Assembly: GCF_963853765.1 (NCBI RefSeq)
Contig: NC_088858.1
Location: 32,922,001-32,986,000 of the forward strand
From: Magallana gigas
Taxonomy: Eukaryota
Direction: 5' to 3'
Length of the DNA: 64,000 bases
Shown: piece by piece, positions 38,313 to 49,204 of the stretch
How positions within the stretch are numbered: the first letter of the stretch is position 1
Layout of the letters: every line of letters begins with the position of its first letter
The notes under the pieces: model-generated
Database searches by the model: none
What the model was told of the DNA's origin: nothing
The model's input: the letters and a program-made list of their open reading frames with translations, nothing else
Position numbers and translations under genes: made by a program

Positions 38313-39641
38313 TCAATTACTGAGATAACTATCTGGATCGGAGAAGCTGGAAATACTGGGCAAGATGATGGCGGGGATCAGCATCAAGATGAACACTGAA
38401 AATTGAGGTATGTACATCAGATATTTTAGAGAAAATACACCCTCAAGGAATTCTATATCGCCATTTGCCCAAAATTTTGAACCTCGTAGAAAATTAGCCA
38501 CAAACATTTTTAACGAAACCTATGACTTGAGAAGTTGTTTATTTGAAGTTGTTGGAACGTGAATATTCTTCATAATCGTAGCTTATCAATTTTTTATTGT
38601 TTTTTTTGTAAAATTATTCATACAGTTCATGAGGGTTTATTTTATGGGACTAAAAATGTTATTATTCGAAAACATATTCATATATTTATTTAAAACAGTA
38701 TTTACACCGGTAAACTAAATTCATGACACACATCTAAAAATGATTCTTTATGTTTTTTGTTTTCGTTGCGACTAGAAAATTACATGAATAAAATGAAATA
38801 CATGGAGCTAAAATGGCACATTCAAAGCTATTCATACAATTATCACTTTGAAAATGGTTTTCAAAACCAAGCAGTAACGCACTAAATTGGTCAATGTTTG
38901 ATGAAGTTAGTCTAAGTCTAAGGAAAAGTTTTAAAAATGTTATAAATATGAAAATAAAGTTAAATCATTTTGAATTCTAATACAAGTTTGTTGCATGTAA
39001 ATTTCGCTGTATAATTTTTAAAAATATATCAAACAGATTATTTTTAAAGATTGAAACTATTAAAAAAAATCCTCTTAATATGGTTTGGATAAACGCCTAG
39101 ATTATTGCTATTTTACAGTCTCAAAATATTTAACTGTTTAATAAGATAAAAATTCAAAGAAATGATATAATTTTCAGCTATAATTATGCATCTTTTTTTC
39201 TTCCAGAATAACAGTTTAATGTTCTGTGGGTTTTTTCTTTTTCTTTTTCTTTTTTTTGGGGGGGTGGGGGGTGGGGGGAGAAGAATCATTATACTTACGA
39301 AGAATCAAGATGCCGATCAAGAATCCACCGCTCTGGCCGAGAGCTCCCGAAATACCGTTAACTCCACCGCCTCCGACGCCATATCCGCCTCCGTAACCAC
39401 CACCTAATCCACCTCCGCCCGAGAGACCTCCCGATATGCCACCCCCGACCCCTGCCCCTCCGACTCCAGTGGTGTAGTACTGGACTCTTCCGGGAATGAC
39501 CTGAGCGTACACTTGCTGTTGGGGTTGATAATAAGCTTGGTAATTGAAACCGTGGCCGCCACCGTATCCCTTGGCGCAGGCAACGGCCACAAGACCAGCG
39601 AGGAGTGCTAGTCTCACTGCAAAACTCTTTGAGGAAGCCAT
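38313..39641 (-). CDS. Gly/Tyr-rich protein with signal peptide and C-terminal transmembrane segment, paralog 1, 141 aa
   Basis: Coding exons 39299-39641 and 38313-38395, phase-1 intron. MASSKSFAVRLALLAGLVAVACA|KGYGGGHGFNYQAYYQPQQQVYAQVIPGRVQYYTTGVGG..poly-G..GFLIGILILLFILMLIPAIILPSISSFSDPDSYLSN*. Probable non-coding exon at ~39792-39813 with a TATA-like element at 39836-39843. Confidence 0.85.
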
Positions 39642-39699
39642 CACTCCACTGGGCAGATAGAAAATATGAAAAAAATCATTAATGTCCATTTTCACTTCT

Positions 39700-39731
<32 letters not shown>

Positions 39732-39779
39732 GGAGAGAGAGAGAGAGAGAGAAAGAGGAGAGAGAGAGAGAGAGAGAGA
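39700..39779. repeat. (GA)n microsatellite in the probable 5' UTR intron of paralog 1
   Basis: Directly visible, interrupted by aa/gg. Confidence 0.95.
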
Positions 39780-45103: not shown

Positions 45104-46430
45104 CAGGGATGAGGTAATGGTAATTTGTAATTGTAATTGAGTGTAATTAATTACAAATTTTGATGTTATTGAAAGTAATTGACCTTTTTTTCAATAACAT
45201 GTTATGGTAATTTAATTAATTACTTGAAAAAAGTCATGTAATTCAAATTACTATTTAATTACTTTCAATTACACATGTACACTGATGTATATATGAATAA
45301 GAAAGCTGTCCAGGCACATGCACTATCCATTGTTCTCCACACTTCTGATGGTACAAAAGTATGAAACAATACAAAAACAAAAGCAGGAAGAGTAGTTAAA
45401 TGCATTTAACTTTTACCAAATATACATGAAGTTTAAAAAAAAAACTTTATTAACTAATTCACTATCTAATACTGAGATTCCTTAATTTATGTCAAATATG
45501 AATATCAATGTTTCTAATATTTATCAATTTGTTAAGGACCAAATAGTTTTGATGGTATGCTTAGTCTCTTTTACCTAAAAAAATATCTAATTGTAAAAAA
45601 TAATGTTTTTAATTATTAGTTGAATTTGATTTAAAAAAAAAATCTGTTGATTTCACAAATAAAATCAATGTTGTGCTTTTTAATTGCCAGTTTGCCTAGA
45701 GCTGTTGCTTCAGTAGGGTTTTTAAGTTTTTATTGCCAAATCTTGGCGGGTTCTCTTAATGACCAATTGGTGTGAATTGTGATTTGATAACTTTACAGGC
45801 TGCTCTCTACCCCATTTTTCCAATTTATATAAACACAAGTGCTTGAGGACAGGACCGATCCCCCTCCACCCCCAAGTATCTACAGCCCCGGTATCTAATT
45901 TACTCACATATTTATAATCTAATGTACATGTAGACAACCATTGCACAAAATTACTTAAAACAAACATTTTGAAAATAAATAATATCTCCTCTATATATAG
46001 TACAATTATATATCAAGGGAATATGATTTTTTTTTTCAAAATAAGAAAAATTTAGTGGAGATGTTTACTTTCAATGTCCCAAAAAGACTTGAGGTTGAGG
46101 GAGATGGATACTAAACAAACAATACTCATATGGATACTGAACAAACAATACCTATTAAATAAAACTGTAAACATGTGTAGGTGTTGTAGTCGTACCTAAA
46201 TCATTCATTTCAAGAGAAAATTTGTACAAGTCATATCTGCTTTATTTCAATAAATATTTTTTTTCTCAAATGTAATGTGCTATTTAATTAATTACATTTA
46301 CAAAGTAATTGTAATTTAATTAATTACATTTGAAAATCCTAGTAATGGGAATGGTAATTTAATTGAAGGTTTTAAGGAAGTAATTATAATTTAAATTAAT
46401 TACTTTCGAATGTAATTGACCCCATCTCTG
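45104..46430. mobile_element. 1327-bp non-autonomous hAT element
   Basis: Perfect 8-bp TSD AATGAAAT (45096-45103, 46431-46438); TIR cagggatgaggt / accccatctctg; dense subterminal gtaatt/aattac repeats at both ends. Confidence 0.85.
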
Positions 46431-48552
46431 AATGAAATATATAGAATATTTAACCAACTCTGTTAGTTATTAAATAGCTAACCGTAGTAAAAAATAAGCT
46501 GATGTACTATAAAACTAAACTTCTCAAATATTAAATATAAATAAAGTTCCGATACTTGATTAGATGAAATGTTGCATGATCGTGGCCATTTTGAAAAAAA
46601 ACAACAAAAAACTCTTACGTTCTTTGGACAAAAAAGCTTTGTAAAAATATAAATTTTAGACCTTTCAGTATTCCTTATTTATTTGCAGTAAGAAAGTTTT
46701 CTCAATATATCATATTGGCAATATTGTGACCACCCAGCCTCCCAAAGGTTGTCTTACCACACACGAAGCGGACACTCAACTGAATAATCCAGTTGTCAAA
46801 TGACAATTGATCGTTTATTGACAGTTTGTCAGAGACGCATATACAACTATATATTGTCATTAAGAACATTGTACTTACCACAAAATGAAGCAAATTATTT
46901 ACTTACGAAACAAGTCTATTCTCTTCCCTTGCACAGATGTTTCCAAATTCTATAATAATTGCATCGATGGCATGCACTCTAACAGGTGACGTTGGTTGAT
47001 GATAAACTTTGCTGCTACTTTGACAGTAATCCAACCTCTATAGGTGATCCTTATGCAAAGTTACATCAGATGTACTTGTAGGTCTTGAGGCTTCCACATC
47101 ATGTCTTATATTATGTGGTTTTATTTTATGCCACTTAGTTCGAATAAGTTTGTTCATCGAAGGTTCCTTTTACGTCTAATAAATTACAATGACCATTAAC
47201 GTTTAATGAGAAAATATATTTAAGTTCTGTTCACAAAAATCGAGACTAATAATGTACTAATATCTTTATATAAGAATAAATATGTGCAGACTAAATCAGA
47301 ATTGCATTTTCATTTAAACGATTCCTATTTCTGTTTTTCCTTATTTCCAATTTGTTATGCTATGTGGGTTATTTTTTATTCACTCTTGACGTCATGTTAC
47401 ACACTGAAACAAAAATATGGATATGATTTAAATTTCACTAAATATACACAGGAAAAATAAATATGTTAATAATAATCCATCTCAAAAATGAGAATCGTCA
47501 CTGGTTAAAATATCTTGAAATAAAAAAAATGCAAAGTAAAGAAAAAAAAGGTAAAATCAGGTTAAAATTCTTGCTTAGTAAAATTGTAGTCTAATTTACT
47601 TTAAATTAGAGAACACATACATGTATCTCAATGTATTTTACTACTCTTGTCTTTGTTTAATCTCAGGTTAAAGTTAAAAGACTTGAATTTATCCTGACCA
47701 AAAAGTTATTGAAGCACAGATCTGGGTTTTTTTTAGTATTTTTAAAACAATGATCACTAAGGGGCCTAAATAGTATGGATAAAAGGACGCTTCGAACACG
47801 TTAAAAATTAAAAAGTAAAATTCATAAGTAAACACACTTTCAGAACCAATTAAACATACTATTAGTTAAATGTCAAACAAGTATGAACTGCATTTATGAA
47901 AGCTTCTAGATTATGATAACGTAATGTTTATGTCGTAAATTGCTATTTGTTGTCATCTAAGCAGGTGAATCATCATCCAGAAAAGACCAACAAACTAAAT
48001 GCGAAATCATAAATAACACAGGTAATGCACTTTGTAACGGGGAATACTGGGTACGCCAACGAACCCTATCACAAATGATTCGACAAGCCCATGAATCTGT
48101 AAGCAACCTTCGAATTCTTTTTTCCTATTTGCCGATGAACTCTAGTAAGGATGGGAGATGGAAATATATTTAAGGAGCGAGTATGTTCACCCTTATGAAC
48201 ACGACATTCCCCTGCCCAGGTAAATATCTTTTACTCACAATGATAAGGCCTTTATCATTTCACATGTTTTAAAATATATCATTAAACATTAATTTACTTA
48301 TTCAGCTGATAATTTTGTTCTTTGATTGAATGAAAATGGAAAAATATGTAATATAATGTAGATTCGATAATTGTTCATTTTGTTGTTTTTATATAAACTG
48401 AAAAAAAAATAACTTATCAAAGTGTTATATTTCTCGTGTATGTTCTTAAAACCTATTCATATCAATCTAAAACAGTCAACATATATACTCAATACTTTAC
48501 TACTATTTGTATTTTAGATAAAAAGGAAATAAAGCACGGCTAAATCCTCACA

Positions 48553-49204
48553 ATGGGCGTCTTCACAACCATCTTCTCTTCTGCACTAGTGCTTGTTGCC
48601 CTCACAGCAGTCGCCGAGGCCGGAGGCTACGGGGGCGGGCATCAATACAGCTATGCTCAGTTCCAGCAGCCCCAGATGTACGCCTACTACCAGCCACCCC
48701 GCGTCCAGTACTACACCACCGGAGTTGGATACGGTGCCGGTTATGGTGCCGGTGCTGGTGCCGGTTATGGACTGAACGCTGGTCTGGCCAACGCAGGAGG
48801 AATCAGTGGAGGCATTGCTGGCTCTATCATCCCCATTGTCATCATCTGTAAGTGGAAGATATTTGTGTCTCTTATCACCAATATATGGAAGATATTTGTG
48901 TCTCTTATCGCCAATATATGGAAGATATTTGTGTCTCTTATCGCCAATATATGGAAGATATTTGTGTCTCTTATCGCCAATATATGGAAGATATTTGTGT
49001 CTCTTATTGTCAATATATCAACTGAATTCTATCATAGTAATTTGTTTAATTTGTATATTCTTGATTTCTATTTATATTTCTAGTTCTTTTTTTAACTGTG
49101 GTGATTGTTATTTCTTTCATACAGTTGTAATTCTGGCCATCCTCGCCCCAGTACTGATTGGAAGTCTCGTCTCTTCTAATGACGTTGTATTCGGAAGCAG
49201 TTAA
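48553..49204 (+). CDS. Gly/Tyr-rich protein with signal peptide and C-terminal transmembrane segment, paralog 2, 124 aa
   Basis: Coding exons 48553-48847 and 49125-49204, phase-1 intron. MGVFTTIFSSALVLVALTAVAEA|GGYGGGHQYSYAQFQQPQMYAYYQPPRVQYYTTGVGYGAG..IAGSIIPIVIIFVILAILAPVLIGSLVSSNDVVFGSS*. Probable non-coding exon ending at 48219 (TATTTAA at 48167); probable 3' UTR intron 49211-49357. Confidence 0.85.
48853..49018. repeat. 33-bp minisatellite, ~5 copies, at the start of the paralog 2 coding intron
   Basis: Unit ggaagatatttgtgtctcttatcgccaatatat. Confidence 0.95.

What the first reader, a model, noticed from the sequence alone, without database searches (positions are those of the whole stretch)
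38313..49204. Divergent pair of paralogous Gly/Tyr-rich, membrane-anchored secreted proteins: a candidate undescribed family
Seen: two genes 8.9 kb apart, head-to-head, with the same architecture (probable short non-coding exon; signal peptide; GYGGGH; Q/Y-rich linker; identical RVQYYTTGVG; variable Gly tract; a phase-1 intron splitting a ~22-aa hydrophobic helix; short acidic tail). The conserved decamer survives while the rest diverges. Established: Gly/Tyr-rich proteins such as shematrins are mollusc shell and periostracum matrix components, but shematrins end in a basic RKKKY-type tail rather than a TM anchor. Inference: a distinct cell-surface-tethered structural or cross-linking (Tyr/DOPA) family, in which RVQYYTTG could be a beta-strand assembly or processing motif.
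Basis: partly seen in the sequence, partly recalled or inferred. Interest (0 to 1): 0.7.

Follow-up and report, generated by a model that had tools for sequence, protein, structure and literature searches.

The report
Oyster-only membrane-anchored Gly/Tyr-rich protein family

Summary
The window is Magallana (Crassostrea) gigas, G000 contig C6.

- **Gene models.** Gene A (minus, CDS 39641-39299 + 38395-38313) and gene B (plus, CDS 48553-48847 + 49125-49204) are head-to-head paralogs (BLASTP E 8e-13). Each has a signal peptide, GYGGGH at the mature N-terminus, a Q/Y linker, RVQYYTTGVG, a Gly tract and a hydrophobic helix split by a phase-1 intron.
- **Splicing.** Contigs from 4 runs of 3 studies (two on record as RNA) join 39299 to 38395 of gene A exactly. 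Gene B equals RefSeq XP_011451597.1.
- **Family size.** The pair is one end of a family of about 9 intact genes and 2 decayed copies, on C6 at 32.96-33.05 Mb and on C2.
- **Range.** A profile search of 1.84 billion proteins gave 29 hits. Every named one is from Ostreidae (Magallana, Crassostrea, Saccostrea, Ostrea).
- **Known families.** There is no Pfam or PDB relative, and no paper was found.
- **Conservation.** The best conserved part is the membrane helix and tail (IIPIxIIFVxLAIFAPxLIGSLxSSN[D/E]). RVQYYTTG is specific to the A/B clade. dN/dS against C. virginica is about 0.1-0.2.

The function is inferred only: a type I membrane protein with a disordered, uncharged, Tyr-rich ectodomain, possibly a self-associating or cross-linkable surface layer. 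The shematrin membership test fails.

The parts
42518..42549 (-). Gene A: 3' end of an alternative distal 5' leader exon, spliced to 39980. A TATA-like tataaaaata lies near 42700.
   Evidence: The loose end of one X4 contig at 39982 maps uniquely to 42520-42549. An AAG|GTTATT donor is in the sequence. One contig in one run only.
39792..39982 (-). Gene A: non-coding exon 1, long form. The short form probably starts near 39802-39812, downstream of gtatatattt at 39843-39834.
   Evidence: An X4 contig joins 39648|39792 and runs to 39982. X10, X12 and X1 contigs carry 9-14 nt of this exon's 3' end. Upstream ATGs end in a stop inside the exon, giving a 44-aa uORF.
39649..39791 (-). Gene A: intron 1, containing a (GA/CT)n microsatellite at 39700-39779.
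   Evidence: Joint; tandem repeat; GT..AG ends.
39299..39648 (-). Gene A: exon 2. The CDS starts at 39641. It encodes the signal peptide, KGYGGGH, the Q/Y linker, RVQYYTTGVG, the Gly tract and the first half of the membrane helix.
   Evidence: Translation. RNA contigs cover 39299-39650 in four runs. The UniProt A0A8W8HYW2 model is 99% identical.
38396..39298 (-). Gene A: intron 2, phase 1, 903 nt, splitting the membrane helix.
   Evidence: Joint 38395|39299 'skips 903, CT..AC' in X10, X12, X4 and X1.
38285..38395 (-). Gene A: exon 3. It encodes the second half of the membrane helix and the tail SISSFSDPDSYLSN, with the stop at 38315-38313, followed by 3' UTR. A possible 3' UTR intron spans 37976-38284.
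   Evidence: Translation. Contigs reach 38285-38331. The joint 37975|38285 is seen in X12 only, with a 28-letter side, so it is tentative.
48113..48219 (+). Gene B: conserved promoter (atatatttaagg near 48165) and a predicted short non-coding exon 1 ending at the donor cccag|gtaaat (48219|48220).
   Evidence: Sequence and splice strings. Window 48113-48231 is 80% identical to the C. virginica locus. Not checked with reads.
48518..48847 (+). Gene B: exon 2. The CDS starts at 48553. It encodes the signal peptide, GGYGGGH, the Q/Y linker, RVQYYTTGVG, the (GAGY)n/Gly-Ala tract and the first half of the membrane helix. It contains a 12-nt x3.2 coding repeat at 48733-48770.
   Evidence: Identical to residues 1-98 of XP_011451597.1.
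48848..49124 (+). Gene B: intron 2, phase 1, 277 nt, with a 33-nt x5 minisatellite at 48853-49018.
   Evidence: Splice strings and tandem repeat. The junction is implied by the RefSeq, C. angulata and C. virginica models.
49125..49210 (+). Gene B: exon 3. It encodes the second half of the membrane helix and the tail SSNDVVFGSS, with the stop at 49202-49204. The donor aacag|gtaaac opens a predicted 3' UTR intron.
   Evidence: dN/dS against C. virginica is 0.09.
49358..49420 (+). Gene B: predicted 3' UTR exon 4, which is also the coding end of the alternative Ensembl isoform A0A8W8HZ71.
   Evidence: Acceptor tttacag|. 82.5% identity to C. virginica over 49341-49420. P0017 sequence.

Best explanation
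Genes A and B are two members of a gene family restricted to true oysters (Ostreidae). M. gigas has about 9 intact genes and 2 decayed copies: a tandem cluster on contig C6 at 32.96-33.05 Mb and a pair on C2.

Shown:
- Each gene has a short non-coding 5' exon, then one exon encoding the signal peptide, the ectodomain and the first half of a membrane helix. A phase-1 intron follows, then an exon with the rest of the helix and a 10-15-residue tail without basic residues.
- The genes are transcribed and spliced in this way and evolve under purifying selection.

Inferred from the sequence:
- After signal-peptide cleavage (AxA|G/K), the protein is a type I single-pass membrane protein.
- Its 65-90-residue ectodomain starts with (G/K)(G/S)YGG and is disordered. 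It has no Cys in gene B and one in some paralogs, almost no charge, and is made of Gly, Tyr, Gln, Pro and Ala.

Proposed mechanism, not tested:
- The Tyr 'stickers' in Gly/Gln 'spacers' let the tethered ectodomains self-associate on the apical cell surface or inside secretory compartments.
- They could serve as substrates for oxidative Tyr cross-linking by tyrosinase or peroxidase, giving a membrane-anchored protein layer that couples the cell to an extracellular matrix such as periostracum, shell matrix or cement.
- The unusually conserved, Pro-containing helix and tail probably mediate oligomerisation or binding to a partner in the membrane.
For: Gene models and expression:
- Spliced contigs exist in 4 runs of 3 studies for gene A.
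- RefSeq and Ensembl models are identical or nearly identical to the predicted proteins.

Paralogy and family:
- A vs B gives E 8e-13.
- Further copies with the same exon structure lie at C6 33010284, 33015235, 33020132, about 33027900, about 33032000, 33036666 and 33046848, and at C2 6193550 and 6190226.

Taxonomic range:
- Only 29 hits at E<=1e-3 in 1.84 billion representatives. All named ones are Magallana, Crassostrea, Saccostrea or Ostrea.

Selection and synteny:
- dN is 0.13-0.26 with saturated dS, so omega is about 0.1-0.2 against C. virginica.
- Synteny and the head-to-head order are conserved.

Topology:
- N-terminal hydrophobic segment with -3/-1 Ala/Val.
- C-terminal segment with Kyte-Doolittle maximum 3.3.
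- AF2 gives helices at 2-24 and 89-122 and a disordered region 24-87.

Conservation profile: membrane helix 0.69 > GYGG 0.65 > tail 0.57 > RVQYYTTG 0.39.

Composition: counts. The resemblance to Gly/Tyr-rich, DOPA-containing molluscan periostracum and shell proteins rests on established knowledge, not on a test here.
Against: - No tissue, stage or proteome information could be obtained, so the surface-layer and cross-linking role is pure inference.
- The tail lacks the basic residues usual on the cytosolic side of type I proteins.
- The ectodomain sequence is poorly conserved apart from composition, while the helix is well conserved. This could mean that the helix, not the ectodomain, carries the function.
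- SignalP and DeepTMHMM were not available; topology rests on hydropathy, the -3/-1 rule and AF2.
Confidence: 0.4

Rival explanations
1. Precursor of a secreted matrix protein. The membrane helix is only a transient anchor, and the Gly/Tyr-rich ectodomain is shed by a protease and built into the periostracum, shell matrix, hinge ligament or cement. This would resemble the membrane-anchored EGF-ZP shell matrix protein precursors.
For: The ectodomain composition resembles secreted Gly/Tyr-rich molluscan matrix proteins (established knowledge). A paper on EGF/ZP shell matrix proteins turned up in the search; I did not read it. The length of the Gly tract is free to vary between alleles and paralogs, as in structural repeats.
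Against: No furin-type or dibasic site lies near the helix in any member (alignment). The helix and tail are the best conserved part of the family (omega 0.03-0.09 in B), which is unexpected for a disposable anchor. No shell-proteome record was found by accession.
Confidence: 0.2
2. The function is centred on the membrane helix. The proteins are small accessory or regulatory subunits of a membrane complex such as a channel, transporter or receptor, in the manner of FXYD or KCNE proteins. The low-complexity ectodomain is a spacer or modulatory appendage.
For: The helix plus tail motif IIPIxIIFVxLAIFAPxLIGSLxSSN[D/E]A is conserved across paralogs that have diverged almost completely elsewhere, and across four genera. 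The size (105-145 aa) and single-pass topology fit.
Against: The Gly/Tyr/Gln composition, the mature N-terminal GYGG and the absence of charge are kept in all paralogs, so the ectodomain is under constraint too. Tandem expansion to about 10 copies is more typical of structural, surface or defence genes than of complex subunits. Gene A has a much altered helix (long branch).
Confidence: 0.2
3. Defence peptides. The Gly/Tyr-rich ectodomain would act like the glycine/tyrosine-rich antimicrobial peptides of other invertebrates (nematode NLP/CNC peptides, acanthoscurrin), either displayed on the cell surface or released from it.
For: Composition and small size. Tandem, lineage-restricted, rapidly diverging cluster. 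Transcripts are abundant enough to assemble in oyster metatranscriptomes.
Against: All intact members keep a membrane helix, and none has dibasic processing sites. The ectodomain is nearly uncharged rather than cationic. There is no sequence relation to any such peptide family.
Confidence: 0.07
4. Not functional genes: chance ORFs in low-complexity DNA, or mis-annotated models.
For: The sequence is low-complexity and the proteins are short. Some database models are clearly wrong, for example the N-terminal extension of A0A8W8HYW2, which needs an intron not seen in the contigs.
Against: Exact canonical splicing occurs in RNA contigs of 3 studies. Orthologs exist in four genera with saturated dS but low dN. 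Intron phase and position are conserved in all paralogs. Synteny is conserved.
Confidence: 0.02

Closest known systems
Shematrins (Pinctada shell-framework proteins) and related Gly/Tyr-rich molluscan matrix proteins (KRMP, Mytilus periostracin). Their features are taken from established knowledge, not tested here.
   Same: Signal peptide. A Gly- and Tyr-rich low-complexity mature protein with few charges. Multigene family in a bivalve. Plausible substrate for Tyr-based cross-linking.
   Different: The oyster family ends in a conserved about 25-residue membrane helix plus a short, non-basic tail, not in a basic RKKKY-type end. It has a Q/Y/P-rich linker. The profile search returned no non-ostreid protein.
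Prion-like / FUS-type low-complexity domains ([G/S]Y[G/S], Q-rich 'sticker and spacer' sequences)
   Same: The ectodomain composition (Gly, Tyr, Gln, few charges) and the predicted disorder are of this type, so self-association through Tyr is a reasonable expectation.
   Different: Those domains are intracellular parts of RNA-binding proteins. Here the domain is extracellular or luminal and tethered to a membrane. This is an analogy, not homology.
Small single-pass accessory membrane proteins with a conserved helix (FXYD, KCNE)
   Same: Signal peptide, short ectodomain, one conserved membrane helix, short tail, and about 100-140 residues.
   Different: There is no FXYD or other shared motif and no sequence relation. 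The ectodomain is low-complexity, and the family is tandemly expanded and restricted to oysters.
Swiss-Prot P86857 'Alanine and glycine-rich protein' of Mytilus californianus shell, the apparent source of the RefSeq name of gene B
   Same: Ala/Gly-rich composition. The same name is used by NCBI for XP_011451597.1, and the Mytilus protein is quoted as a shell protein in PMC7573561.
   Different: No Mytilus protein appeared among the profile hits. The name reflects composition and is not evidence of homology.

Membership tests
Shematrin | N-terminal signal peptide followed by a Gly/Tyr-rich repetitive domain | tested here: met
   Hydrophobic N-terminus with an AxA-type site. The ectodomains have 13-38 Gly and 6-13 Tyr. 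The definition of the family is from memory (Yano et al. 2006).
Shematrin | Basic C-terminal motif (RKKKY, RRKKY or RRRKY) and no membrane anchor | tested here: not met
   The C-termini are ...SSNDVVFGSS and ...SDPDSYLSN, each preceded by a strongly hydrophobic helix.
Shematrin | Detectable sequence homology to Pinctada shematrins | tested here: not met
   The profile search of 1.84 billion representatives returned only ostreid proteins or unnamed oyster-like ones. Caveat: I could not verify that shematrins are in that library.
Type I single-pass membrane protein (topology class) | Cleavable signal peptide, one membrane helix and a C-terminal cytosolic tail | tested here: met
   Two hydrophobic segments only. 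AF2 helices at 2-24 and 89-122. The helix exon is joined in RNA. Prediction only; the tail lacks basic residues.
GPI-anchored protein | Hydrophobic stretch at the very C-terminus, preceded by a small-residue omega site and a polar spacer of 5-10 residues | tested here: not met
   The hydrophobic segment is followed by 10-15 conserved polar residues, and Gly/Ser run directly into the helix without a spacer. This is a rule-based check; no GPI predictor was available.
Gly/Tyr-rich antimicrobial peptides (nematode NLP/CNC type) | Secreted precursor without a membrane helix, with peptides released at basic sites | tested here: not met
   All intact members keep the helix, and no dibasic sites are present.
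Any Pfam family, or any protein with a solved structure | A match above the curated threshold | tested here: not met
   The best Pfam E-value is 0.054, far below the gathering scores. The best PDB E-value is 0.002, to an unrelated Gly-rich or hydrophobic stretch.

The most novel reading that the evidence does not exclude
An oyster-specific invention. Membrane-tethered, prion-like Gly/Tyr/Gln ectodomains condense on the apical surface of matrix-secreting cells and are oxidatively cross-linked into the first layer of periostracum or cement. They would physically couple the epithelium to the extracellular material. The family's origin in the ostreid ancestor would then be linked to the cemented, byssus-less way of life.
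Probability: 0.12. Interest if true: 0.7.

Novelty: new variant of a known kind. Interest (0 to 1): 0.42.

Why it matters
Oysters owe much of their biology to lineage-specific secreted proteins: shell, periostracum, cementation and mucosal defence. This family is small and cleanly defined, with about 10 genes, one conserved membrane helix and one low-complexity ectodomain. It is restricted to Ostreidae, is under purifying selection, and has no description beyond automatic names. It offers a tractable case of a taxonomically restricted gene family, and of an extracellular, membrane-tethered 'sticker-spacer' low-complexity domain. If it proves to link cells to periostracum, shell or cement, it would interest biomineralisation and bioadhesion research. 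If not, it remains an ordinary orphan family.

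Tried and rejected
- **Pfam.** Scans of both exons and of ten full-length members found nothing near threshold.
- **PDB.** The sequence profile search gave only chance matches to pilin helices and Gly-rich stretches.
- **ESM Atlas.** Two calls gave best scores of 0.87 and TM below 0.55 to unnamed or bacterial clusters, so they are not informative.
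- **AlphaFold2.** The ectodomain has pLDDT below 50 and no strand at RVQYYTTG, so no fold search was run.
- **Literature.** Searches by XP_011451597, K1QM50, LOC10534521x, six C. virginica and O. edulis locus tags, four peptide motifs and several word combinations found no paper on these genes. The one 'alanine and glycine-rich protein' hit refers to a Mytilus shell peptide. The 'spidroin-like glycine-rich' oyster gene in a bioRxiv preprint could not be linked to this family.
- **Earlier findings of the scan.** Only this same finding was returned.
- **GPI-anchor reading.** Rejected on the conserved polar tail after the helix.
- **N-terminal extension of A0A8W8HYW2.** Rejected. The observed 5' exon is continuous, and its upstream ATGs stop inside it.
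- **Intergenic and neighbouring ORFs.** Pfam scans of ORFs at 43.7-44.2 kb and 50.9-52.2 kb gave nothing.
- **Not done.** Exons were searched by reference, and full-length forms came from database proteins that the tools returned. The only joining was exon 1 to exon 2 of gene A inside a script, to check upstream ATGs.

Full report
**Identity of the window.** Exact protein matches place the window in Magallana (Crassostrea) gigas. It is G000 contig C6, 32922001-32986000, in a 564-Mb, 29-contig assembly.

**Check of the observation.** Reading both strands confirms the two genes.

Gene A, minus strand:
- The ATG is at 39641, 7 nt after an acceptor (cccag|tggagtgATG).
- The coding exon runs to 39299 (343 nt from the ATG, so phase 1; donor c|gtaagt).
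- The next exon starts at 38395 after ttttcag| and ends with the stop at 38315-38313.

Gene B, plus strand:
- The ATG is at 48553, and the exon ends at 48847 (295 nt, phase 1; t|gtaagt).
- The next exon starts at 49125 after acag|, with the stop at 49202-49204.

Both proteins have the following parts:
- a hydrophobic N-terminus ending in an AxA-type cleavage site (AEA|GGYGGGH in B, ACA|KGYGGGH in A);
- a Q/Y/P-rich linker;
- the identical decamer RVQYYTTGVG;
- a Gly-rich tract;
- a roughly 25-residue hydrophobic segment split by the intron;
- a 10-15-residue tail with net charge -1 to -2.

The two coding exons align with E 8e-13. The back-translated RVQYYTTG pattern occurs exactly twice in the whole genome, at these two genes, and not at all for the reversed control.

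**Transcription and splicing.** Twenty public runs from ten studies hold the whole coding exon of gene A, four of them on record as RNA-Seq.
- I laid four runs from three studies (X10, X12, X4, X1). Each has a contig that covers 39299-39650 and continues at 38395, skipping exactly 903 nt with GT..AG ends on the minus strand.
- An X4 contig joins 39648 to 39792 and runs to 39982, which gives a non-coding exon 1.
- In X10, X12 and X1 the contigs carry only 9-14 nt of that exon, followed in X10 and X12 by sequencing adapter. This fits a main start about 25-35 nt downstream of a TATA-like gtatatattt (39843-39834).
- The same X4 contig continues into a sequence that maps uniquely to 42520-42549. 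This is an alternative distal leader exon, seen once.
- Upstream ATGs in the long exon 1 are closed by a stop. The 52-residue N-terminal extension of the Ensembl model A0A8W8HYW2 is therefore probably a model artefact, and the conserved start is MASSKS, as in C. virginica.

For gene B I had no second read-laying run. Its splice rests on three points:
- identity of the predicted product with RefSeq XP_011451597.1 (124 aa);
- the same junction in the C. angulata and C. virginica models;
- strong conservation of the second exon.

**It is a family, not a pair.** Six-frame searches of the genome used each exon, paralog XP_011451593.1 and a family profile. Reading the resulting loci gives the following copies.
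- On C6, all on the plus strand: further genes at 33010284, 33015235 (LOC105345215), 33020132, about 33027900, about 33032000 and 33036666, and a degenerate copy at 33046848.
- On C2: one gene at 6193550 and a truncated copy at 6190226.
- Every copy with a recognisable helix keeps the phase-1 intron at the same place in it (…IIPIxII|F…).
- Most of the plus-strand C6 genes beyond A and B read as if the start codon were split A|TG by the 5' intron. This is inferred from the sequence; the exon-1 end was located for only one of them (L003).

**Range and database status.** A word-based search with a family alignment and an exhaustive HMMER profile search of 1.84 billion representatives agree.
- The profile search gave 29 hits at E<=1e-3. 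All that carry a name are from M. gigas, M. angulata, C. virginica, Saccostrea cucullata or echinata, or Ostrea edulis.
- The unnamed ones are oyster-like read-through ORFs from raw assemblies. The weakest hit (P0084) looks unrelated.
- The names given are 'uncharacterized protein', 'glycine-rich protein-like', 'alanine and glycine-rich protein', 'serine, glycine and glutamine-rich protein-like' and, for K1QM50, 'Lipoprotein'. All are automatic.
- No Pfam family, no PDB relative and no paper was found.

**Evolution.**
- In C. virginica the A-type and B-type genes are also head-to-head, 2.6 kb apart, next to AHSA1.
- The whole neighbourhood is syntenic with window 28-52 kb. This includes gene B's promoter and exon 1 (80% identity) and its 3' UTR exon.
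- Between the two species synonymous sites are saturated while dN is 0.13-0.26. Omega is about 0.1-0.2 overall and 0.03-0.09 in the helix and tail of B.
- In a maximum-likelihood tree A and B are sister clades (support 90/87). A sits on a long stem, so it is the derived copy. The C2 subfamily already contains Ostrea, Saccostrea and Magallana.
- The Gly tract varies by repeat-unit indels between alleles and species. This fits the 12-nt coding repeat at 48733-48770.

**What is conserved.** Across 17 full-length members, I scored the share of sequences carrying the commonest residue:

| Region | Share |
|---|---|
| Membrane helix | 0.69 |
| Mature N-terminal GYGG | 0.65 |
| Tail | 0.57 |
| Q/Y linker | 0.55 |
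| Gly tract | 0.42 |
| RVQYYTTGVG | 0.39 |

- The family signature is therefore (G/K)(G/S)YGG at the mature N-terminus plus IIPIxIIFVxLAIFAPxLIGSLxSSN[D/E]A(L/V)(F/W).
- RVQYYTTG marks only the A/B clade, and it varies there too (SVRYVTAG, RVQYLTTG, RVQYYTPG). Other paralogs have a looser VQYYQP.
- AlphaFold2 with the family alignment gives helices for residues 2-24 and 89-122 (pLDDT about 84) and no structure for 24-87 (pLDDT below 50).

**How it most likely works.**
- Shown: expressed, spliced, selected genes for small proteins with two hydrophobic segments.
- Inferred from sequence rules: signal-peptide cleavage and type I insertion. The ectodomain is disordered, nearly uncharged and without N-glycosylation sequons. 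It has no Cys in gene B and at most one in some paralogs, with about one residue in eight Tyr.
- Proposed: these tethered Tyr-'sticker'/Gly-Gln-'spacer' chains self-associate at the cell surface or in secretory compartments. They may be oxidatively cross-linked into or onto an extracellular matrix. The conserved Pro-containing helix and tail would mediate oligomerisation or binding to a partner.
- I give the whole statement, mechanism included, about 0.4. The gene and family part alone is near 0.95.
- Rivals: shedding of the ectodomain as a matrix protein (0.2), a helix-centred accessory-subunit role (0.2), surface or released defence peptides (0.07), and artefact (0.02, effectively refuted).

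**Comparison with known families.**
- The proteins resemble shematrin, KRMP and periostracin-type Gly/Tyr-rich proteins in composition. They fail the shematrin test on the C-terminus and on homology.
- A GPI anchor is unlikely, because a conserved polar tail follows the helix.
- There is no relation to Gly/Tyr-rich antimicrobial peptides.
- The RefSeq name of gene B appears to be borrowed from a Mytilus shell peptide (P86857, quoted in PMC7573561). No Mytilus protein appeared among the profile hits.

**Limits.**
- No tissue or stage information could be reached, because run identities are coded.
- SignalP, DeepTMHMM and GPI predictors were not available.
- The genome collections hold no other molluscs, so 'restricted to Ostreidae' rests on protein databases.
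Exons were searched by reference, and full-length proteins were those that the tools returned.

**Verdict.** This is a real, correctly read, lineage-restricted and functionally undescribed family. It is moderately interesting and its mechanism is open.

Noticed in passing
window 42518-42710 (minus): An alternative distal leader exon of gene A. One RNA contig (run X4) splices ...CCAATTTA(AG) at about 42518-42520 to 39980. A TATA-like tataaaaata lies about 150 nt upstream. This would place a second promoter 2.7 kb upstream of the proximal one.
   Followed up: partly
window 48853-49018: A 33-nt x5 minisatellite (97% matches) lies inside intron 2 of gene B. Read-through ORFs of related oyster species show a single copy, so the expansion appears specific to M. 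gigas. It caused the repetitive 'WKIFVSLIANI' ORF in the six-frame listing.
   Followed up: partly
window 48733-48770: A coding 12-nt repeat GGTGCCGGTTAT (Gly-Ala-Gly-Tyr) x3.2 lies in gene B. Alleles and species differ by repeat-unit indels (P0018, P0019, P0016).
   Followed up: partly
window 40497-40750: Many short RNA contigs with several sequence variants and unlike flanks lie here in three runs. It looks like an expressed dispersed repeat between the two genes.
   Followed up: no
window 43698-44229 (plus): Two adjacent ORFs (88 and 80 aa) lie in the intergenic region. The second has a CxxC...C Cys pattern that I associate, from memory, with retroelement ORF2 ends. Pfam gave nothing. The 8.9-kb spacer is 2.6 kb in C. 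virginica, so insertions are likely.
   Followed up: partly
window 28487-33690 (minus): Exons here are 75-92% identical in DNA to the C. virginica gene annotated with the Aha1_N and AHSA1 domains. This is the syntenic neighbour downstream of gene A.
   Followed up: partly
window 50822-52367: Two blocks (50854-51117 and 51995-52367) are conserved with C. virginica at 75-82% DNA identity, beyond gene B. They are probably exons of an unidentified neighbouring gene; no Pfam hit was found for the ORFs tried.
   Followed up: partly
G000 C6 33010284-33047060 and C2 6190226-6193780 (loci L003, L009-L011, L019, L024-L027): This is the rest of the family. In most members the start codon appears to be split A|TG by the 5' intron. 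L026 and L025 carry stops or truncations and look like decaying copies. Ensembl isoform A0A8W8HY48 (P0056) lacks the whole Gly tract, so it is either a modelling artefact or an alternative splice.
   Followed up: partly
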